A stretch of DNA of 64,000 nt, taken from positions 14,198,001 through 14,262,000 of the forward strand of contig OZ281495.1 of assembly GCA_965637545.1 (NCBI GenBank), written 5' to 3'. The notes below the pieces were generated by a model. That model was not told the origin of the DNA, ran no database searches, and saw nothing but the letters and a program-made list of their open reading frames with translations. The first letter of the stretch is position 1. Each line of letters opens with the position of its first letter. This document shows, piece by piece, positions 3,101 to 46,048 of this stretch. This DNA comes from Phallusia mammillata (Eukaryota). The translations under genes were made by a program, and so were the position numbers.

Positions 3101-5677
3101 GACGACTGGTGGGCAAACTTGCTTTACTTCAGTAACCTATACCCGCTTGTACCCGACGTAAGTAAAATTTCGTAAAAGTCGTCTTCGAAAAGCAAAGTGA
3201 CGCAGTTCTAACTTCTAATTGTATTTTTTTTACAATCAAATTGATAATAAAATGTTTTGCAGTGTTTCCAATGGTGTTGGTATCTGGCAAACGACATGCA
3301 GTTTTATCTACTTTCTCCAATTTTTCTGTTTGTACTTTACAAGTAAGAGCAGCTTCATCCAAACTAGGGCGTTCACATCCAACCAAACCTTTTTTGTGCA
3401 TAGGTCGAAGTTGTGGGGCCATGTGCTACTCGTTGCAGGAACACTTGGAAGCATTTTAACGTCTGCATTACTCACATACTTTGCAGCAGTACAACCTGAT
3501 GCTGTCGTCATATCACTAAACCTCAATTTGTAAGTTTATTTGTTTGTGGATTATTTATTTTTTGTTTAATTCGTTTATTATGCGCTTAAACATAGGCTCT
3601 TAACCAGGACAAACTTTTCGAAACGGTTTTTACGATCACAGTCATTTTTCCTATGTTTGCCGCACCCCAAATGCTAAATATATGTAAGCAAAAGTTAATA
3701 AGCGTGTGTGTTATGGAAACATGAAGATACGGTAGTCTGGAAACATGGCTGGTTGGTTTCAACAGCAACTATTGAAACGTTTACAATAAATATGATTAGC
3801 TGTAAAAAGCTGTATGGTAGTTGTGTATTTAATTATATCACTACAGGTATTCTAAGAATTGGCATTAGTTTGTTTGCATCGCTTAATGGCAACAAAGCAT
3901 TAAAACGAGTAGTGGGATTCAGCCAGCTCACACCGGTTGTGTAGAACCATCTCACGAAATTTTATGAGATCAGCGAACCGGTTACTGTCAATGGACTTTT
4001 CGTAACAGAACAAGCAGAAAAATATGACTTTTGTGATAGAACTGGATGACAAAATATTTGAATCCCCTCACTGATTAAAATCCCAATGCTTAATTACCAG
4101 CCGAACAAAATATTAACTTGTCATGTAGTTAATATTGCTCTTTTGCAGGGCTCGCAGATTTTCTAACCCCAACGCGGGTATTCCAGATTCATTCCCTGTA
4201 AAGTATCAAACCGACACTTATAGAACTCCATGGTGCCGAATTTCGGTGTATCTTATTGGAATGATGGCGGGTTACTTTCTTTTTGAACACAAGATGAGAC
4301 TGAAAATGAACAAGGTTTCATTTGTTTGTTTTTTATGTTAAAATTTAAGTACAACTCCAAGTGTAGCATGATATCTTTGCAATAAATGCTTGCAACGGTA
4401 ATCCACAAAAAATAATTGATCATCGTTTATTTTAGTACCGCTGAAAATTATAACAATTATTTAACACAAAATAAATGCACCAAGAAGTATTAAAAATGCG
4501 CAGCAGCTTTGCAATTTTGAATGAAATATTACCTTGCAAGCAAAACATTTCATGCAATTCCATTCCCCTGACAAATATCTGAAAATATAATGTTTTTTCA
4601 AGATGCTTGTATTCTTCGGTTGGTTAACAAGCGCGGCGGTTGCTTGCACCATCGTTTACGCCCTCTACCCGAGCGTCCAGGTCTCCGAGCCCCTTACCAT
4701 TGAGGCAGCTGTAATGTGGGGAACGTTTTCTCGACCCGTCTGGGCACTGTGCATTGTGTGGGTTATAGTTGCCTGCGTCACCGGTTATGGAGGTAAGTCT
4801 TAATAGAATAACTCTTTTTCGGGCGTAATCGCCTGTTTGGTCTTTGTACAAAGCATTCAGTAATATTTTACATATTTAAAAAAGCTTTATAAAATGTAGG
4901 CAGTGAGATGAAATAGATTCTATCCATAACCAAATGTTAATTTGCGCATAAAAGTTTGACTCTGTTTTTATAAATTTTTATCAGCTAATTTAACCGATCC
5001 AAAAAGTCAAAAAAGTATGTTAAAATTCTTACTTATACTTTATTTAATATTACCAATACCTGTTGATAAGTCTAATATGTCTGTTGAAGACGTTTGGAAA
5101 ACTGATTGGTCTTTTTATCCGATAAAGAATGATGGAAATAGAAACTGATCATCATTTAAAGTTATTATGACCAAAAAATAATAAACCAAAAAAAATTTTT
5201 GTGCCAAGGTCCCGTGAAAGCGTTTCTCGATTGGTCAGCATTCGCACCTCTGAGTCGACTCACATACTCCGCTTACATTATCCACCTAGTGGTCATTTCT
5301 TGGTACTTCGGTGTTCAGGAGCAATTGTTTCATTACTCATATATCAACACAATGTTTATATATTTCGGTAAGAGTTTCAAATACCTCTCTTAGATTTTAA
5401 CCCAAACATGATCTGTTTTACTCTAGGTGTCGTGTTCGTTACATTTGTCTGCTCATTTTACACTACACTTTTGATCGAGTGGCCCATCACTGGTCTGGTG
5501 AAGATTCTTTTCTCCGCCAACCAAGTTTCAAAGACAGAGGAAGAGACGGCGCCGCCCAACGATGTCGAGATCACGATCCAAAACAACCAAAAAAATAACG
5601 ACAGTAAACTGAAAACGATCAGTGGATCAACTAATGATGGTTTTGACGACACAGAAAGTCAGTCTGCTGCATTATAA
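139..5677 (+). CDS. oacyl: NRF-6 / O-acyltransferase-like protein (NRF domain + acyltransferase-3), 12 exons in window, 5' end outside window
   Basis: Phase-consistent GT-AG exons 139-287, 961-1142, 1733-1845, 1914-2078, 2339-2528, 2989-3157, 3263-3342, 3404-3529, 4149-4314, 4603-4792, 5209-5367, 5427-5677. Motifs FDSWAKPEGGIMEGN, GTCFPTSCS, LDGMRVISTTWVIMFH, VDTFFVIGG, RYLRLTPVY, WYLANDMQFY, PLSRLTYSAYIIH are typical of the NRF-6/OACYL family. Confidence 0.9.
1251..1586. mobile_element. hAT-type MITE in oacyl intron
   Basis: TIR CAGGGGTGTCCAAA...TTTGGACACCCCTG; 8-bp TSD gattatgc/gattaagc. A related decayed copy lies at about 590-812. Confidence 0.85.
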
Positions 5678-8774: not shown

Positions 8775-8920
8775 TGTTATTTAACATTTAGGTCAAGCCT
8801 GAAAAATCTTAAAGTTAATTTTTAAGATAAATATTATTAATCTATATAAAGGCATCAAGTAAACAAATAATATGTAAGTTAGATGGCCAACCTGTCCAAT
8901 ATGACCTATGTCTTGTCACC

Positions 8921-8972
8921 AGCTGCACTAATGAGGCTTCGTAAGTAAAAACAGTGTGCACTGTGTACAGCT
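8921..8972 (+). ncRNA. Degenerate type I hammerhead ribozyme remnant
   Basis: AGCTGCA-CTAATGA-GGCTTCGTAAGTA-AAAA-CAGTGTGCACTG-TG-TACAGCT aligns with the intact copy at 40634-40685; core, GAAA and cleavage triplet are mutated. Confidence 0.7.
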
Positions 8973-9064
8973 TAATTATAATTGATCTTTCAAATTTTAT
9001 ACTGTTGGTTTAGATTTAGATTTCTGGATTTAGTCACACGAATAAATGATTGCGATTATCAAGA

Positions 9065-10586: not shown

Positions 10587-13500
10587 CTACACAGAATGAG
10601 TGGCAAGACTTCCTTGCAGTTTCGTTGTGTTCGTTGAACATTTCGAAGCTTGTTGATTTGGTCCTGTTGATGTCTTTTGAACTGGTGGGTGTTTTTGAAA
10701 GCAAGACGGCACGCCTTCGACAAAAGCTGACCGAAAATTCTTGTCCATAAATCCGTAAACAATCACGTTCACCAAACTAGAAGATATATTGACGTTACTG
10801 AAGCAACAATACTAAAAACAATATTAGGGCGAGTTGTGGGTTCTAATCTCAGCCCAGCCATTATTACTTTTCCCAAGACACTTGATATACAACAATGCAC
10901 AGTTCAAGGCAACCATGCTTTGCTCCTCTAACCGTTCATAAAAATGAAAAAACAAGTAAGTGGATTATAACTTAACAATTTTCTTTCAAAAAATGTGTCG
11001 TTTAGTGGAAAGTGAAAAGAGCCTATAATGTTTAATGACGACAACATCATGAAAAGATGCCATAATCATAAACTAAGTACATGGGCGGTTCTCATACGAC
11101 TCCCAACATACACACTACAACCTACCTGTTTGACATGCTCAAGTAGACGCATACAATAAGTGGTGTAGAAATTGTCTCACACGTCAATGCACCAGTGTAG
11201 TTCAAGACCACCACGACCAAAAGAGGCACTGCAATAGAAGTGATCAAATAAGCTACAGTTGATGTTTTGTGGGTTTTTTTAACCAGTCTTATGTCTTTGA
11301 ACACTTTCAAACAAAGGCATAAAATACTAACTTCTCAATGTAAATCCCATATTTACTCTAAGAACTTGTTGTTATGTGGTATTCTGGGACCATTTTTCAA
11401 AAAGCCTATAAAATTAGCAAAACTTCCAGCGATGTGATCATCCGCCCAGGTTGACAAATCTAGGCTTAAGGTTAAAGAAAACTACATAGCAACACGTTTA
11501 CAGAGTAAAAATGGGATTTGAATATAGTTTCAAACAGTATAGACAGGCTACCGCACTCCGCAAACAGCATAAAAAGACTGCAGCTCAGTTTGTTAAGCCC
11601 CAGAGCATATTGTGGTGCCACAAATGTCCATAAACCACAGTAAAATATAAGTTTGTACCACCAATGTCTTGTCACCAGTTGCACTATAAAGACCTTACAT
11701 GTCAAAACAGTGTACGGCTCCCCGCAGCAAGTTGATCAGTATATTGTGATTGATCCTTAAATAGCCGCAATTAAATAGCTTAGTTCGCGATTTGGATTAG
11801 AAACTCGCAAATACAAATCAATTGGTTGCCCTACACCAGGGGTGGGCAAAGGAGTTTATGCGGCCCGCCAAATGTTAGTAAATTTTAAAGACAAAGTTAC
11901 CGAGCAACGCTGAATAGTATTATAAGCACAGGCGTAGAGTTTTAAAAAATACCGAAGGTGCGACTTGCCGATACCTTTACCACATGCAGAATCTGTACCA
12001 GTACCATACTTTGGAACTAAACACAGATACGTTTTACATGTTTTAGCCTGTTGTTTCTGCCACGTTATTATGCAAATCGTCACTTGACACAATTTCTTCG
12101 TTCGATAAAAGTAAAAGCTATTCACGTTTTCAATTACAGCCCACTTTGCACTGTTGACGCCAAAACTTTGGTCATTTTGGATCAAGTTTAGGTCGTTGCA
12201 GTACATTGCAAACGGACATTAAACACGGCAATAGAATCGTTACCACAGACCCGCTCGCTTTGTTTAATGTTGGCGCAAGGAATTTATTAACAAAAAAAAA
12301 CGTGGTGTAGCCTATGTTGCAACAAAAGCCTGTTTGTTTTAAAACAATTACAATTGTAGCGTTTCAACCAATGTTTCTCCAAACAAAGTGACAACGAACG
12401 TATTTGCACATAGCTGAAAATATACTATGTTAATATTTTGGGCTAAATCAGGGGTGCACAACCTGTGGTCGTACGGCCATATACGGCCGCGGAGACGAGT
12501 TTGTGCGGCCGTGACCTTGTATGAAAAAATATATATACTGACTGCCGTGACGTGACTAAAAGTGTTTTGCCAAATATTTCGATTTTCAAACTGCTAAAAC
12601 GAGATTTCGTGAGACTGGCCATATGCGCAAGGCTTTTTATCCGCTTATTGTGTGCAACAATGCGAAAAGAACAGGCACTGCAATCGTCACAATATAGATT
12701 ATGACGTCTTAAACAGTTATCTCCGTTCAGCTAAACTTATACACCTGAGAATTTTAGGCGGCTTTAAATGATATATATATATATATATATGATATAAATC
12801 TAATTTTTTACACCAGTTATTTTTAAAAACAAGTAAGAGGCCGTTGGTGAAATACAATGCGGCCCCATAAAATTATGAACTTTTGAATGTGGCCCTTGCA
12901 CTGAAAAGTTTGCCCATCCCTGCCCTATACCTACCCAGAGTTATTGTAAAACCAATCTGCATGATGGCCAGCATTTTGTACACAGCTGTTTCCCGTTTTT
13001 CTATTTTATGTGCTTCCTGTCGCTGAGAAAGATCACGGGATCCCTTCTTATACGAACGCAGGATGGCACCAGAAGCAACGGTTAAAGCAGTCTAAAGTCA
13101 ACAGTAAAAATTCTAGTAAAATGTAAATATACGTAAGGCCACAGACCATTATATATTGTTAATATGCATTGCTAAAAAGTTAATAATGACGCAATTATCA
13201 TTAAGTTTCAAATACGTTTCCAATTTTCTTCATTTGCAAAAAATAGCTCAAAACGCACTTTGAGAATACGACCTACCATAATCACGTAAGGAACAATAAA
13301 TAGAAATGTAAAAATCAGCGCAAGTGGCCCCAGGTCTTGACTTAATGTGATTTCTTTCATGGTAATATTAAACAGAAATATTGGGTGGGAGTATGTGTAG
13401 GTGTAGACGGAAGGGAAAAAAGCTAAAAAAAGAAGATAATAGTTACAAAAAACGTCAATAAACCTTCATTTACGACACAAAATTAACTTACTTGGAACCA

Positions 13501-26669: not shown

Positions 26670-28155
26670 CCTTCCCTTATTTGAAACCCAATGCTACCAA
26701 ATGTTTCATTATAACTGTAATGCAAAAAAGTTAGTAGATAATAAATCCATAGTGTGTTCGTGCTGTAACTGACCTCATAGTCAAAGGTGAACATTTTTCT
26801 TTAAGATAAAAATTTTCAAACAAAATGACACAGTATGGCAGGCCCATTAAGAACAGTATGTTCATCAAACAAAATGAAAGCAAATAACTAATAAGAGTAA
26901 AAGAGATGACAAGTTAAGATAAGAATTAAGAACACAGACTAAAATAGCTGCTTTCTGCAAATTTCTTTCGGTCATGGGACATAGTTATTTCGTAGGCGTG
27001 CAATCGAGCAGAAATCGTTGGTGCACTTGGTATTTCCAATGATTGAGGCGTTGAAACGAATAATAACAATTTTTAAGTAAGTAACGTAGAGCTGCTAGGC
27101 TGCAACTCATCCAGATTAAAAATGCGACATTTCTCAATGTTCTTATAGTGCTCTTCAACCTCTTTTGCATGGTTTCGCGAACCATTTAAAGTGTTGTGAC
27201 GAACTCATATACCCTGTTTACTTAATAGGTAAACTGAGTTAAAATGCGATATGAAAAATCATTATGCATATCATCATCTTAATAAAACCAAAACAAGAAT
27301 CAAATTAGATACCAACATTTTTAAAAAATACAGAGGTTCATTTATACATCAGTTAAAACCAACATATTTTTTCCAATATCCTGAAAGTCAAATATTAATA
27401 GTTTATTAAAAGTTTGTGATGCACCCTACTATATTTTTTTGTACTGGTGCACCCCATGCATATTTTGTATTTTTTCGTGATAACCGGTTGAAGAGCACTG
27501 TTATAGCATATCGGAAACATATAGCGGAATATTCATTAATATTATGACATATTTACACAAATATTCGATGTGCGATCGTCATAAACGTCTTTTTCTCAAC
27601 TTGACATTTACACATATCATGCATAACACCACCAACTTAGAAAATGAAATATATGATAATTTCGAAAATCGACTCTACGTTTGATGTGTTGTGGTAATAT
27701 CATTTACCGCATTAACTTAAATTTTACATGTTTTTATCGGTACATACATATCTTCAAAATGAAATATTGCACGATTTTCTAGCAATTCGGGCTTATTACA
27801 AATTACGCTATCAAAGATTTATAACGAAACTCACCCAAAATTAGTCGAAGTGCGCTGGCCTTATATAAATATTACCGCATTAACTTAAATTTTACATATT
27901 TTGTAGCCTACTTTACGTACATGTCTTCAAAATGAGCTATTGCTCGATGAAATCGGTTCTGGCAGATAACACAAGAAAATTTATAACTAAAGTCGAAAAT
28001 CAACCTAAAAACTTAAAACAACATGCATATTCACACAACCATGAACTATTGAGACAAGTATACATTGTTTATAGGGGGCTGGTATTTCTTATAAAGTTGC
28101 ATCGAGTGCAGAAGGATAACCATTTTGGGGTAAGCCTATACAGTTTAGGGCAGTG

Positions 28156-40499: not shown

Positions 40500-40633
40500 T
40501 TCTAGCATATCGGAAAACATCGTAATATTCATTAATATCATAACATATTCACACAAATATATTCGATGTGCCCTTGAAATTTACATGTATTATGCATAAC
40601 ACCACCAATTTAGCAAAAAAAATTAATATGATA

Positions 40634-40685
40634 AGCTGCAGACAGTGCACACTGTTTCGACCTATAAGGTCTCATCAGTGCAGCT
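40634..40685 (-). ncRNA. Structurally complete type I hammerhead ribozyme in a 100-bp insertion (40632-40731) with 13-bp TSD
   Basis: Minus-strand RNA AGCUGCA-CUGAUGA-GACC(UUAUA)GGUC-GAAA-CAGU(GUGC)ACUG-UC|UGCAGCU: perfect core, 7-bp stem I, 4-bp stem II, stem III, GUC triplet. Flanked by AAAATTAATATGA at 40619-40631 and 40732-40744; insert absent at the paralogous site near 27660. Confidence 0.92.
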
Positions 40686-41382
40686 GATGACGAGAGATCG
40701 GCCGCATTGGCTAGTGTAGCCATTCAACGGCAAAATTAATATGAATTTCGAAAATCGACTCCAAAACATTCGATGTACTGTGACCATATCATTTACCGCA
40801 TCTACTTGAATTTTACATGTTTTAAGAACTATTGCACGATGTACTAGCAATTCTGGCTTATTACAATTACCCGATCAAAGATTTATAACGAACATTAATA
40901 ATCCATCGAAACTCAACGAAAATTAGATAATGTGCGCTGGGCTCATATAAGTTATTACCGCATTAACTTAAATTTTACATATGTAATAATACAAAATCAA
41001 AAATTTATAACTATAACATCGAAAATCAACCTAAAACCATAAAAAAAACATGCATATTTACACAACCATGAACTATTGAGACAAGTCTACATTATTTATA
41101 GGGGGCTGGTATTTCTTATAAAGTTGCATCGAGTGCAGAAGGATAACAATTTTGGGGTTAGCCTATACATATAAACTATAGTTTAGTGCAGCGTGGTTCT
41201 TAACCTGCGTTTGATTGAACTCTGGGTATTCGACGCACTGGGCTTCAAGTGACTTAGCTACAAATTTGGTTTGAATAAAATTAATTTAACGATCAGTGTA
41301 AGTTTATGAACAACGCTGTGAATTTTTGACATGCTAGTAGGGTGTAAACGTATGATTTGTGACAGAGTAAAACACAAAGACT

Positions 41383-42300
41383 ATGGACAACTTAACTGGT
41401 AATATTACTCCCGCATGTGCTTTGCCTGCCTACTGTTCTCAAGCGGCTTCAAACCACTGTTTAGAAACTCCGTTGATTAGCTGTCAATACTGCAGGTAAC
41501 CTTATTCAAGTCTTGATTTTTGGATCTTAGTTTTAAACTGTTTCAATCTGTACCATTTTTTGTGTAAAAAAACTTTTCCTGGTTTGTTTGCAGTTTTACA
41601 TCCGCTTTCTTCTTACTGTTTTTCATCCCATTTGTTGGATTTTCCGTGGTCATCTCGAATTTTTTGGTCATTGCAATAGTTTGTAAAACAAAACCCTCCG
41701 ACAGAAGAAAACTGGACTACGTCAAGGCTTCATTGGCTGTGTCAGATATCATTAACGATTGGTCGGACATTTATTTATCACATTGCAATTGGTTTATTAA
41801 ACCACCAATCATAGAAGTGAAGTATAGATTGACGTTACCAATGTTTTGGATAATCAACATTAAAACTCATTCACACGTTTGTTCTGTGATTGACAGGCTT
41901 GGATGCCCTGTTTGTGACTTTCCGGTACGGAGCGATTTTTTTGCATTCGTCGGTTTCCGAAATGCTGGAAATCGAAGTTCAATCAAAAGGGAGTATCGAG
42001 GCAACCATTTTGGGATTTGTGAACTTTACAGCCTACTCAGTGTGCACCTACCACTTGCTGTACATGAGCATGCAAAGATTTGCTGCTGTTAATTATCCTT
42101 TCAAATATAAAGCACTGTCTGCCCGGTCCGTGTATATTCACCTTATATTTGTCTGGTGCTTTTCAATAGCGTGGGGACTTTCACCGGGTGCGTTATGATT
42201 GCAAATTAGGGATAATACTTATATTTATTTTGATTTGTTTTTTACAGTGTACTTCTACAATGACTCAGAATTTCAAATGTTCGGCATCGCTTTTCAATGA
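41383..42300 (+). pseudogene. GPCR alpha-4: exon-2 donor mutated (GT>AT) and truncated in ECL2
   Basis: AACG|ATTGGT vs AACG|GTTGGT in other copies; homology ends at TTTCAA-TGA (42300), joined to the beta-2 3' flank. Confidence 0.82.
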
Positions 42301-42456: not shown

Positions 42457-44074
42457 TCAACAATTAACCGGTGATATATTCAAGCTTGACTGTTTGCATG
42501 TGCATAATTTGTTCCAGTATTTCTTGAAGTTGTTTTGAAATTGATGGTCGAATGCACTGTACGCCATCACGTTTACCAAGCTGAGTAAAACAACATAGGT
42601 AAAAACGCCGAAACACGTAGGCTATTTCTGTTTATCATACTTTACCCTGTGGATACTGAAAGACAGTAGCAGATGAAATAGGACGATGAGATAAAATCAC
42701 AAGGCACCAAGTCCAAACTGGTTAACATGGACAAAGTTACCACAGGAACTGTGAATAGAATTTACTAAAACTTTATGTGATTATACCTTTTTCATGTTTC
42801 AAACACACAACAGGTCAACTTTTGTTATTTTACCTATCCCCACAGATAAGCCAAGCACCATGAACGTTGTAATTTTCAGCAAATGTATCTCCTTGTTCAA
42901 AGTACACTGTGTGTGAGCTTGCCTTAAGTCTCTAGACTTTCTACGAAGTTTCCAGACCATTCGAGCCGTTATGCAAGTCAATGTTGTCTGCAAATTATGA
43001 CGTATAGTTAGAGTAAAATATATTGCTTCAGACTACATTCAAACTTACCACCAACACGTAGGGAATAAGGAAAAAGGCGATAAACACAAAAAATTGTAAA
43101 GGTCTCGATTGTACAATATCAATGTATAATGAACCAAACGGAAGATATTGAAAAGCGATGCCCAAAACTTGAAATTTTAAGTCAGCGTAAATATAAGCTG
43201 CAAATCAGAAATCGGAAAAATTGAGCTGCTATCACCATAGTAAAATGTATAACTCAAACTCACCCGGTGCTGAACCAAACACTATTGAAAAGCACCAGAC
43301 CAATATCAGGTGAAAATGTACGGATCGGACTGATTGTGCTTTATACCTGAAAGGGTATTTTACAGCAGCAAACCTTTGCATGCTCATGTACAGTAGGTGG
43401 TAAATGGTTAATGTGTAGGTTGAGAAATGCACTATCCCTCCAATGGTTGCTTCAACAGTACCTCGGGATTTGGTTTCAATTTCAAGCATCTCCAAAACCG
43501 ACGAATGTAAAAATGTTGCACCGTATCTGACAGTCACAAACAGAACATCTAAACCTGGCAAAACAAAGAACAAGGTAAGTGTAAAAGACTCGTTGCTGAC
43601 TATCTTTTACCAGGTAACAAAATACACAAGGCTGGTATAACGGCATGTTATTTTCCTAACTTATTCCAATTATTGATCAAAGTAATTTTTAACCAACAAA
43701 CCACTAATGATATCAGTCATAGCAAGTGAAGCTTTGACGTAGTCCAATTTTCTTCTGTCACTTGGTTTTGTAATCAACGTAACCAGTAAGACCAACAAAT
43801 TTGAGAAGGCTACAGAAAATCCAAGAATTGCAAGGCAAAACAGTAAGAAAAATGCCGACGTAAAACTATAAAAAAAAATATGAAAATAAAACAAACTCGC
43901 AATAACTCACAAGGAAACAGTTAAAACAAAAAAATGAGTAAAACCGGTGGTATAAAGTTACCTGCAGTATTGACAGTCGATGAGTGTGGTTTGAAGGCAT
44001 TGATTTGAGGCTGAACGAGAACAAAAAGCAGGAAGAGCACAAAACGAAGAAAAAATTACAGTCAAATTCCGCAT
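42457..44074 (-). CDS. Rhodopsin-like orphan GPCR beta-2, 7 exons, apparently intact
   Basis: ATG 44074 (MRNLTVIFSSFCALPAFCSRSASNQCLQTTLIDCQYC); same exon structure as beta-1; a small indel changes the C-terminal tail (..CTCKQSSLNISPVNC*). Confidence 0.8.
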
Positions 44075-44441: not shown

Positions 44442-46048
44442 TCAATGGTTAACTGAAGTAATATTTGATCTTGTAAGTTTCTGTGGCCTTACTTTGTTCC
44501 AAAGTTTCTTCAGATTATTTTGAAACGACTGATCATAAGCACTGTACACCATCACGTTTATCAAACTGCAAACCAGTAAACATTGATTATAATAGTAAAC
44601 GATGTCATACGAAACGTCAATTCTATAGTCGCACTTACCCAGTGGAAATAGCAAGAGTGTAACAGACAAAATACGACGAGGAGACAAGCTCACAAGGTAC
44701 CAAACCCACGCTGGTCAAAACAGTTACAGTTACGACCAGTGGCGTATCTAGGATCGTTTTTAGGGGGGGGGGGGGGGGGGGGGGGGGCAATAATAAGAAA
44801 TATTTTGCGACACCTGGCGGCGAAAAATGCGCCACCTTGCGGCAGAAAATGCGCCATCTGGCGGTAGACTGTGTAGACCTCTATGTTACTAAACTCGCAA
44901 TATCAACTAAATGCTGGTTAGCCTAAGGCCCTGTGAAGCCCTTACTCTTGCTGTAAGTAATGAACGTATAGTCACGATTCGATCGTATACAATACATGTA
45001 ACACTTTTTAACACTCGACACAGTTGTTTCTAACAGTGGTTGCCTCTTAATCATATTGTGAAATATCTTCACTTGTATGAGTGTGACATAACAAAGCTAT
45101 TATAAAATCCATTGTGACGTCATACACGCAGTTGGACGCCAAGTGGCCTAGATTGGCATTGTTTATTGAGATGTGTGACGAGCATCAATGCGTTACGCAC
45201 ATTGCTATTTACAGTTTTGTCTGAAAGTGCAAGATTCAATACTAAAACAGCCGTTCAAAATTTCTTGAGGGGCGGGCATGGCAACCATAACGCACCTGCT
45301 GAAGAACCACACGCTACTGAAAAGAACCAGACTAAAATGAGGTGAACATATACGGACCGGACAGGGAGTGCGTTATACTTGAAAGGATACTTAACAGCAG
45401 CAAATCTTTGCATGCTCATGTACAGCAACTGGTAGGTGCACACTGAGTAGGCTGTGAAGTTCACAACCCCCAAAATGGTTGCCTCGATACTCCCTCTTGA
45501 TAGAAATTCGATTTCCAGCATTTCAGAAACCGACGAATACAGGAAAATTACTCCGTACCGGACAGTCACAAACAGTGCGTCTAACCCTGTAAATACAGAA
45601 TAAACAAGTGTCAATTAGTTTTAATGTTGATTATCTTCGACATTGGTGATGTCAATATATTTAATTGAATAAATGACTAACCGTTGATTACATCTGCTAT
45701 AGCCAATGAATTAAGCCCTGACGTAGTCAACTTTTCTTCTGTCAGACGTTTTTGTTGTACAAACTACTGCAATAACCAACAGATTTAAGATGACAACGGA
45801 AAATCCAACAAATGCGATGAAAAACAGTAAGAAGAAAGCTGATGTAATACTGCAAACATACAAGAAAACGTTATTTGACATAAAAAGTGTTAACAGTTCA
45901 AAACTAAGATTAAAGAACAAAAAACTTGAATAAGGTTACCTGTAGTATTGACAGCTAATCAACGGAGTTTTAAAGCAGTGGTTTGAAGCCGCTTGAGAAC
46001 AGTAGGCAAATCACATGTGAAAGTAATATTAACAGTTGAGTTGTCCAT
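44442..46048 (-). pseudogene. GPCR alpha-5: frameshifts plus loss of ECL2-TM5-ICL3 exons, replaced by repeat DNA
   Basis: 4-bp deletion in exon 1 (TTGCCTACTG), 4-bp insertion giving TAA at end of exon 2, and 44738-45285 occupied by a CAGTGGCGTATCTAGG element where exons 4-5 should be. Confidence 0.82.
44738..45285. mobile_element. Partial non-autonomous DNA element with (G)25 tract and three 22-bp-spaced GC-rich subterminal repeats
   Basis: 5' end CAGTGGCGTATCTAGG; G-run 44763-44787; repeats at 44807, 44829, 44851; right boundary approximate, no 3' TIR found. Confidence 0.55.

What the first reader, a model, noticed from the sequence alone, without database searches (positions are those of the whole stretch)
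40619..40744. Complete type I hammerhead ribozyme retroposed as a 100-bp unit with a 13-bp TSD
Seen: every conserved core nucleotide (CUGAUGA, GAAA, GUC) and all three stems are intact on the minus strand, with predicted cleavage between 40641 and 40640. The insert is flanked by AAAATTAATATGA direct repeats and is absent from the paralogous block near 27660, so it inserted after the duplication. It ends 9 nt past the cleavage site and encodes no protein. Stem III (CAGUGUGCACUG) is near-palindromic, allowing a dimeric fold. Established: type I hammerheads occur in Penelope pLTRs and in non-autonomous retrozymes with circular RNA intermediates; long variable TSDs indicate target-primed reverse transcription. 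Inference: a young member of a possibly undescribed minimal ribozyme retroelement family in this lineage.
Basis: partly seen in the sequence, partly recalled or inferred. Interest (0 to 1): 0.85.

Follow-up and report, generated by a model that had tools for sequence, protein, structure and literature searches.

The report
Truncated hammerhead retrozyme copy, sea squirt
The 100-bp insert is a real, recently inserted piece of DNA carrying a complete self-cutting hammerhead RNA motif, but it is only the 3' third of a 282-bp non-coding jumping element (a "retrozyme") that is present in roughly two thousand near-identical copies in this genome, and elements of this kind are already described in animals.

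Summary
A complete type I hammerhead lies on the minus strand at 40634-40685, with cleavage predicted between 40641 and 40640. The 100-bp insert (40632-40731) is flanked by an exact 13-bp duplication, and the paralogous block near 27650 is uninterrupted.

The interpretation needs correcting. The 100 bp is not a unit. It is a 5'-truncated copy (unit positions 192-282 plus 1-9, counted from the cleavage site) of a 282-bp non-coding element. The genome search gave about 1,939 first-look candidates for the hammerhead end and 653 for the central part. The best 40 copies are 99% identical.

Copies occur in three forms:
- 282-bp tandem arrays;
- solo 5'-truncated copies;
- head-to-head inverted pairs inside a single 11-14-bp duplication.

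Some copies also carry short inverted "tails". This is the published insertion signature of Penelope-like elements, and the element fits the animal non-LTR retrozymes of Cervera and de la Peña (2020).

This genome has many GIY-YIG Penelope elements with their own hammerheads 60-85 nt before the 3' end. None of the 32 sampled loci shares this unit's sequence as its own end, so the autonomous partner is unidentified. RNA cleavage, RNA circles and expression could not be shown.

Earlier notes of this scan already describe the same kind of element elsewhere in this genome. Verdict: a new member of a known kind, of low to moderate interest.

The parts
40619..40631 (.). Left copy of the 13-bp target-site duplication (AAAATTAATATGA on the + strand)
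   Evidence: Exact repeat read. It abuts the insert. The family-wide duplication length is 11-14 bp.
40632..40731 (-). 100-bp 5'-truncated copy of the 282-bp retrozyme unit (unit positions 192-282 plus 1-9, numbered from the cleavage site)
   Evidence: It is 99% identical over its full length to at least 40 other genomic copies, which extend further on both sides. It matches unit 191-282 at 98.9%.
40634..40685 (-). Complete type I hammerhead ribozyme motif; predicted cleavage between 40641 and 40640
   Evidence: Rfam RF00163, 22.8 bits, full model. The minimum-free-energy fold is the hammerhead. Chance expectation is 0.023 per window or less.
40732..40744 (.). Right copy of the 13-bp target-site duplication
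   Evidence: On the element's strand the duplication reads TCATATTAATTTT. Its first 4 bases, TCAT, equal the element's next bases (unit positions 10-13), so there are 0-4 nt of microhomology at the priming site.
27644..27658 (.). Empty (uninserted) paralogous target site
   Evidence: BLAST of the flanks: 40573-40634 matches 27600-27659 and 40739-40823 matches 27651-27734.
8896..8974 (+). Old, decayed 5'-truncated relative of the same family (about 80% identity; core mutated to CUAAUGA, GAAA region degraded). It also ends at ...CAGCTTA.
11661..11713 (+). Second decayed fragment of the hammerhead region of the family (81% identity, ribozyme broken)

Best explanation
The insert is a dead-on-arrival, 5'-truncated DNA copy of a 282-nt non-coding hammerhead retroelement, a non-LTR retrozyme. 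The proposed life cycle is as follows. Genomic tandem or partial-tandem copies are transcribed. The type I hammerhead cuts the RNA at the unit boundary. A reverse transcriptase and endonuclease supplied in trans, most probably from a GIY-YIG Penelope-like element, makes a staggered cut about 12-14 bp wide. It then primes cDNA synthesis from the nicked target on the RNA, in a zone 9-40 nt downstream of the ribozyme. In this copy, synthesis started 9-13 nt past the cleavage site, aided by up to 4 nt of microhomology, and stopped after about 100 nt. Because the copy spans the cleavage site, its template was an uncleaved multimeric RNA or a re-ligated (circular) RNA. Shown here: the motif, the duplication, the empty site, the family structure, the copy-number skew and the presence of Penelope elements. 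Inferred: the RNA intermediate, self-cleavage, which enzyme mobilises it, and whether the template was a circle or a multimer. The copy itself probably has no function.
For: 1) Family. The 100-bp query gives 1,939 first-look candidates, and the 40 scored are 99% identical. The central 153 bp of the unit gives only 653 candidates, which is the 3'-biased copy number expected from 5' truncation.
2) Unit. Tandem arrays have exact 282-bp spacing. No frame is open for more than 44 codons, GC is 49%, and the circular fold is -98 kcal/mol, z = -3.05.
3) Insertion signature. 5' start points are spread across the unit. Head-to-head inverted pairs are joined at variable points and enclosed by one duplication of 11-14 bp in 16 of the 30 loci, which is 14 of about 26 independent events. 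Six events carry short (37-62 bp) inverted 3'-terminal pieces. These are the features listed for Penelope-like elements in PMC8557442.
4) 3' ends. They cluster at unit positions 9-13, 17-21 and 35-40. In a large run of unrecorded type that is probably DNA (X15), at least 226 contigs leave the element at positions 5-10.
5) The empty paralogous site and the exact 13-bp duplication at the window copy.
6) Penelope elements in this genome. There are at least 90 GIY-YIG matches with open frames up to 973 aa. Sampled elements carry hammerheads 135-280 nt (up to about 600 nt in a few copies) after the stop codon and about 60-85 nt before the element's 3' end. The retrozyme has the same end architecture, with its hammerhead 36-38 nt before its 3' end.
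7) Pairwise divergence between copies is about 1.2%, so the burst is recent.
Against: No RNA evidence. All listed runs are kept as contigs and none is on record as RNA. My single read-laying run was laid on a stretch spanning a head-to-head junction instead of one clean unit. No autonomous element sharing this unit's 3' end was found among 32 GIY-YIG loci, and their hammerheads differ: they have a 4-6-nt palindromic helix III. The hammerhead scores below Rfam's gathering threshold. Copies are too similar to show covariation or selection on the ribozyme. Candidate counts come from a loose first look and may include related families.
Confidence: 0.82

Rival explanations
1. It is a 5'-truncated fragment of the 3' end (pLTR) of an autonomous Penelope-like element, not of a separate non-autonomous family.
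For: Penelope elements in this genome carry a hammerhead near their 3' ends and are numerous. Retrozymes are reported to be related to PLE pLTRs.
Against: In about 26 independent events the sequence upstream of the unit is another unit at exact 282-bp spacing, an inverted copy, or unique flank. It is never an ORF. No sampled PLE 3' UTR resembles the unit: local alignment scores were 24 or less. The only BLAST hits are neighbouring insertions.
Confidence: 0.08
2. It is a hammerhead-bearing satellite DNA spread by DNA-level processes (recombination, extrachromosomal circles) and not by reverse transcription.
For: Tandem arrays of 282 bp exist. The classical newt hammerhead repeats were first called satellite DNA.
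Against: Dispersed solo copies have variable 5' ends and a few fixed 3' ends. The target duplications are tight at 11-14 bp. There is a clean empty paralogous site. The 3' end is about three times as abundant as the centre.
Confidence: 0.04
3. One reading: an autonomous class of minimal ~100-bp ribozyme retroposons whose full unit is the ribozyme plus a short leader.
For: L002 is a second copy of almost the same extent, unit positions 190-10.
Against: 5' start points among copies are spread over the whole 282-bp unit. The 100-bp copies are just two points of that spread.
Confidence: 0.02
4. This particular copy has been co-opted as a host cis-acting ribozyme, for example to process a transcript of the neighbouring GPCR-like gene.
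For: It lies about 1 kb upstream of a 7TM-receptor-like ORF at 41646-42198, on the opposite strand. The ribozyme is intact.
Against: It is 99% identical to thousands of copies and absent from the paralogue. It is antisense to the nearest ORF. There is no evidence of transcription.
Confidence: 0.02

Closest known systems
Animal non-LTR retrozymes (Cervera & de la Peña 2020, Nucleic Acids Res, PMC7229834; Li, Clavereau & Pollet 2026, bioRxiv 10.64898/2026.07.22.740005)
   Same: Type I hammerhead inside a non-coding repeat of a few hundred bp (282 bp here; 170-400 nt reported). It forms tandem arrays from dimers upward. GC is below 50%, duplications are longer than 4 bp, it has no LTR, it co-exists with Penelope-like elements, and copy number is high.
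   Different: The host is a tunicate, a group not mentioned in the main text of those papers. Most dispersed copies here are 5'-truncated or head-to-head pairs and not arrays. RNA circles were not shown here. Helix III is 5 bp with a GUGC loop and near-palindromic. Helix I shows no obvious internal loop for loop-loop contacts.
Penelope-like elements and their pLTR hammerheads (Cervera & de la Peña 2014; Arkhipova 2006; Craig et al. 2021, PMC8557442)
   Same: The insertion anatomy matches: heavy 5' truncation, partial tandems, an adjacent inverted 5'-truncated copy, short 'tail' pieces, and a hammerhead close to the 3' end.
   Different: It has no RT or GIY-YIG ORF and is 282 bp long instead of 3-4 kb. 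Its hammerhead has a real helix III hairpin. The PLEs sampled in this genome have minimal hammerheads with a 4-6-nt palindromic helix III.
Newt/axolotl satellite 2 and Schistosoma Sm-alpha hammerhead repeats
   Same: Type I hammerhead in repeats of about 330 bp, with possible action as a dimer through helix III.
   Different: Those ribozymes have a very short helix III and need the dimer. Here the monomer fold is already the minimum-free-energy structure.
Plant LTR retrozymes (Cervera et al. 2016, PMC4918200)
   Same: Non-autonomous, ribozyme-bounded, with a proposed circular RNA intermediate.
   Different: Plant elements have type III hammerheads, LTRs, PBS/PPT, 4-bp duplications and Gypsy mobilisation. 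None of these applies here.

Membership tests
Hammerhead ribozyme, type I (Rfam RF00163) | Conserved core: CUGANGA, GAAA and a UH cleavage triplet | tested here: met
   CUGAUGA, GAAA and GUC are all present.
Hammerhead ribozyme, type I (Rfam RF00163) | Three helices around the core, with helix I open (5' and 3' ends in helix I) | tested here: met
   Helices I/II/III are 7/5/5 bp. The minimum-free-energy fold of the 59-nt and 100-nt RNAs equals this fold.
Hammerhead ribozyme, type I (Rfam RF00163) | Score at or above Rfam's gathering threshold (34 bits) | tested here: not met
   22.8 bits, E 0.0031 in a 361-bp scan. There is no hit at gathering over the window. The shortfall comes from the longer helix III and different loops, not from the core.
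Hammerhead ribozyme, type I (Rfam RF00163) | Self-cleavage activity | not testable with these tools
   This needs in vitro transcription. Only contigs were available, so RNA ends could not be read.
Animal non-LTR retrozyme | Type I hammerhead inside a short (about 150-450 bp) repeat that forms tandem copies | tested here: met
   282-bp spacing in arrays on C3, C4 and C6. L025 holds about 3.6 units.
Animal non-LTR retrozyme | Non-coding and non-autonomous, with no LTR | tested here: met
   The longest open frame is 44 codons or fewer in any frame of a circularised unit. There are no terminal repeats other than the tandem register. PBS/PPT were not specifically searched.
Animal non-LTR retrozyme | Target-site duplications longer than the 4 bp of plant retrozymes; GC below 50% | tested here: met
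   Duplications are 11-14 bp in 16 of 30 loci, and 13 bp at the window copy. GC is 49.3%.
Animal non-LTR retrozyme | Expressed as linear and circular RNA of unit length | tested here: inconclusive
   Runs guessed to be RNA hold the sequence, but only as contigs, and none is on record as RNA. No ends or circular junctions could be read.
Penelope-like element (autonomous) | ORF with a PLE reverse transcriptase and a GIY-YIG endonuclease | tested here: not met
   The unit has no ORF. No copy among 30 loci continues into an ORF.
Penelope-like element (insertion mechanism only) | 5' truncation, partial tandems, adjacent inverted 5'-truncated copy, 30-40-bp tail, hammerhead near the 3' end | tested here: met
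   compared with the description in PMC8557442. The PLEs of this genome have their hammerhead 60-85 nt before the 3' end.

The most novel reading that the evidence does not exclude
This would be a currently active retrozyme family in a tunicate, with about 1.2% divergence between copies. Its DNA copies record how Penelope-type machinery works. Priming would start at a few discrete sites 9-40 nt downstream of a hammerhead that was uncleaved or re-ligated, so the template was a circle or a multimer. Priming would use 0-5 nt of microhomology, and would proceed from both nicks of a 12-14-bp staggered cut, giving head-to-head pairs inside one duplication. If true, the family would be a natural, high-copy read-out of the still poorly understood PLE integration cycle and of whether circular RNAs serve as templates.
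Probability: 0.3. Interest if true: 0.5.

Novelty: new member of a known kind. Interest (0 to 1): 0.28.

Why it matters
On its own the window copy is an ordinary, inert fragment of a transposable element. The family behind it is of modest interest. It looks recently active in a chordate lineage in which I found no published description of retrozymes. Its many young insertions have clean duplications, discrete 3' termini just past the ribozyme, and paired inverted copies. That makes a convenient data set for working out how Penelope-like reverse transcriptases choose and copy their templates, and whether ribozyme-made RNA circles are those templates.

Tried and rejected
1) The Rfam gathering scan of the whole window found nothing. 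Only the permissive scan shows Hammerhead_1.
2) Search for the autonomous partner. I fetched 32 GIY-YIG loci. BLAST of the unit against them hit only a neighbouring family insertion (L033) and an 84% relic beside an inverted PLE pair (L055). Local alignment of the unit's 3' end to 25 PLE 3' UTRs gave only noise. A permissive Rfam scan of the first 12 PLE loci (L031-L042) missed even their own minimal hammerheads. My strict descriptor missed them too, and they were found only by printing the 3' UTRs.
3) RNA evidence. The look-up of sequencing runs returned only contig-kept runs of uncertain type. My single read-laying run used raw locus coordinates L025:1628-1909. In my re-oriented numbering this stretch spans a head-to-head junction, not one clean unit. 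It therefore gave only 3'-end loose-end counts and no information on expression, cleavage or circles.
The tables of 5' and 3' ends and duplications therefore rest on 30 loci, about 26 independent events.
5) Within-array divergence (0.78%) against between-locus divergence (1.2%) does not decide between rolling-circle copying of one circle and copying of a multimeric transcript.
6) Look-up of earlier findings by sequence and by nearby place was blank.
7) The species was not identified. 'Sea squirt' comes from earlier notes of this scan and was not tested.

Full report
**Observation.** The region reads as described. On the minus strand, 40685-40634 forms a complete type I hammerhead:
- helix I is AGCUGCA/UGCAGCU (7 bp);
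- the core holds CUGAUGA, GAAA and GUC;
- helix II is 5 bp with a UAU loop;
- helix III is 5 bp (including A15.1-U16.1) with a GUGC loop;
- C17 lies at 40641, so cleavage is predicted between 40641 and 40640.

Rfam's Hammerhead_1 model aligns end to end at 22.8 bits (E 0.0031 in a 361-bp scan). That is below the gathering score of 34, which is why the whole-window gathering scan was empty. ViennaRNA gives the hammerhead three-way junction as the minimum-free-energy fold of both the 100-nt insert and the 59-nt core. A descriptor of my own finds this motif and no other on either strand of the window. In 300 first-order Markov random windows it found 0.023 motifs per window with loose stems and none with these stem lengths. 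The 13-bp repeat AAAATTAATATGA is exact at 40619-40631 and 40732-40744. The insert is the 100 bp between the two repeats.

The flanks belong to a duplicated block that is about 82% identical. That block is part of a cluster of 7TM-receptor-like gene fragments. Its other copy runs straight through the site at about 27644-27658. The near-palindromic helix III is also real: a homodimer with a 14-bp intermolecular helix III is predicted at -51.2 kcal/mol, against -35.8 for two monomers.

**What it belongs to.** The 100 bp gave 1,939 first-look candidates in the window's own 240-Mb assembly. The 40 that were scored are 99% identical over the whole 100 bp. The window copy differs from the majority by one C-to-T change just upstream of helix I.

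In the other copies the homology continues on both sides. Several loci hold arrays with exact 282-bp spacing. I numbered the unit from the cleavage site. On that numbering the window copy is unit positions 192-282 plus 1-9, which is the 3' third of the element.

The unit has these properties:
- no frame is open for more than 44 codons;
- GC content is 49%;
- as a circle it folds at -98 kcal/mol (z = -3.05 against shuffles).

The central 153 bp of the unit gave only 653 candidates, against 1,939 for the hammerhead end. That is the 3'-biased abundance expected when most copies are 5'-truncated.

**Insertion anatomy.** I looked at 30 loci, which represent about 26 independent events.
- The 5' start points are spread over the whole unit.
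- The 3' ends fall in three clusters, at positions 9-13, 17-21 and 35-40. The last cluster is the junction used in tandem arrays.
- More than half of the events are head-to-head pairs: two copies in opposite orientation, joined at arbitrary 5' points, with both 3' ends facing outward.
- Sixteen loci (14 independent events), including these composites, are enclosed by one direct duplication of 11-14 bp. The window's 13 bp is therefore typical.
- Six events carry a short (37-62 bp) inverted piece of the 3' terminus at the 5' side.
- The duplication often overlaps the element's next bases by 1-5 nt. In the window copy the overlap is TCAT, which suggests annealing of the nicked target to the template.
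- In a large run of unrecorded type that is probably DNA (X15), at least 226 contigs leave the element at unit positions 5-10, most at position 9. The window copy's end point is therefore a common one.
- Pairwise divergence is about 1.2% between loci and 0.8% within arrays.
- Two decayed relatives in the window (8896-8974 and 11661-11713, about 80% identical) show that the family, or a predecessor of it, has been present for some time.

**Comparison with what is known.** Craig et al. 2021 list the hallmarks of Penelope-like element insertions. These are a high degree of 5' truncation, partial tandems, an inverted 5'-truncated copy adjacent at the 5' end, a 30-40-bp tail, and hammerheads within pLTRs near the 3' ends (PMC8557442). 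Cervera and de la Peña 2020 define animal non-LTR retrozymes. [quoted passage not shown] The present family meets every structural criterion that I could test.

This genome has many GIY-YIG elements: at least 90 matches, with open frames up to 973 aa. In the copies I sampled, a minimal hammerhead with a palindromic 4-6-nt helix III (AUUAAU, AUAUAU or ACGU) lies after the stop codon, usually by 135-280 nt, and about 60-85 nt before the point where copies diverge. The retrozyme has the same end architecture, with its ribozyme 36-38 nt before the canonical 3' end. None of the 32 sampled loci shares the unit's sequence as its own 3' end. That test is not met, but the partner element remains unidentified.

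**Mechanism.**
- Shown: the motif, the duplication, the empty site, the 282-bp unit, the truncation skew, the paired inverted copies inside one duplication, and the presence of PLEs.
- Inferred: the element is transcribed and its RNA is cut by the hammerhead. A PLE-type endonuclease makes a staggered cut 12-14 bp wide. Reverse transcription is primed from the nicked target a short distance downstream of the ribozyme, sometimes from both nicks.

Every copy, including the one in the window, spans the cleavage site. The template must therefore have been uncleaved at that ribozyme, or re-ligated. That means a multimeric transcript or a circle, and I could not decide between them. The window copy is most probably an inert fragment.

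**What could not be done.** All sequencing runs offered were contig-only and of uncertain type. My one read-laying run was laid on a stretch that spans a head-to-head junction instead of one clean unit. Expression, cleavage in vivo and circular RNA are therefore untested. Further copies could not be fetched. Earlier notes of this scan call it a sea squirt, and I did not test that.

The same notes show that the scan has already met this kind of element many times in this genome. They include a 282-nt unit, and follow-ups that reached the same conclusion of a retrozyme with a Penelope-type insertion signature. In the held literature I found no description of retrozymes in tunicates. The only related item was a count of nine type I hammerhead loci in the Didemnum genome paper.

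**Verdict.** Its claim to novelty fails, because the insert is a truncated copy of a 282-bp non-LTR retrozyme, which is a known kind. I rate it a new member of a known kind, with interest of about 0.28.

Noticed in passing
window 41646-42198 (+), 43232-43573 (-), 45255-45614 (-); paralogous blocks at 27.5-29.0, 33.1-36.0 and 45.3-46.9 kb: This part of the window is a cluster of diverged tandem and inverted duplicates holding rhodopsin-type 7TM receptor (7tm_1 / Srx-like) ORF fragments. The retrozyme insertion lies in the duplicated upstream flank of one of them.
   Followed up: partly
L039/L041/L042/L043/L046, L047/L058/L059/L060, L045/L048/L032/L034, L049/L054/L056/L057, L044/L052/L062, L053/L036: At least six sequence types of GIY-YIG Penelope-like elements occur here. 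Each has a minimal hammerhead whose helix III is only a 4-6-nt palindrome (AUUAAU, AUAUAU or ACGU). It lies after the stop codon, usually by 135-280 nt, and about 60-85 nt before the element's 3' end.
   Followed up: partly
L055 (G000:C1:20100200-20108100): Two GIY-YIG open frames of 523 and 537 aa face away from each other around a symmetric centre near 3930. Each of the two arms carries a hammerhead-like core. An 84% relic of the retrozyme lies beside one arm.
   Followed up: no
L020:2270-3100, L011:1631-2423, L017:2013-2729, L018:1599-2210: Another repeat family, 84-95% identical between loci and with an internal tandem of about 159 bp, directly abuts the 3' end of the retrozyme in L011 and L018. 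It may be a preferred target or a linked element.
   Followed up: no
L025 flanks (oriented about 1001-1050 and 2505-2570); L036:2326-3098: tRNA-like sequences flank the L025 retrozyme array. L036, beside a PLE, holds a cluster of four tRNA matches.
   Followed up: no
family unit, positions about 243-275 (window 40680-40648, minus strand): In the fold of the whole 282-nt unit, UGCACUG (the end of helix I plus the start of the core) pairs with CAGUGUGCA (helix III). This is an alternative inactive conformer that could damp self-cleavage of circles.
   Followed up: no
30 family loci: The 5' ends of arms are about three times enriched in the 16 nt just before the cleavage site (8 of about 45 arms). 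Two of them (L003, L005) start within one base of the cleavage site. This is as expected if some templates were RNAs whose 5' end was made by the ribozyme.
   Followed up: partly
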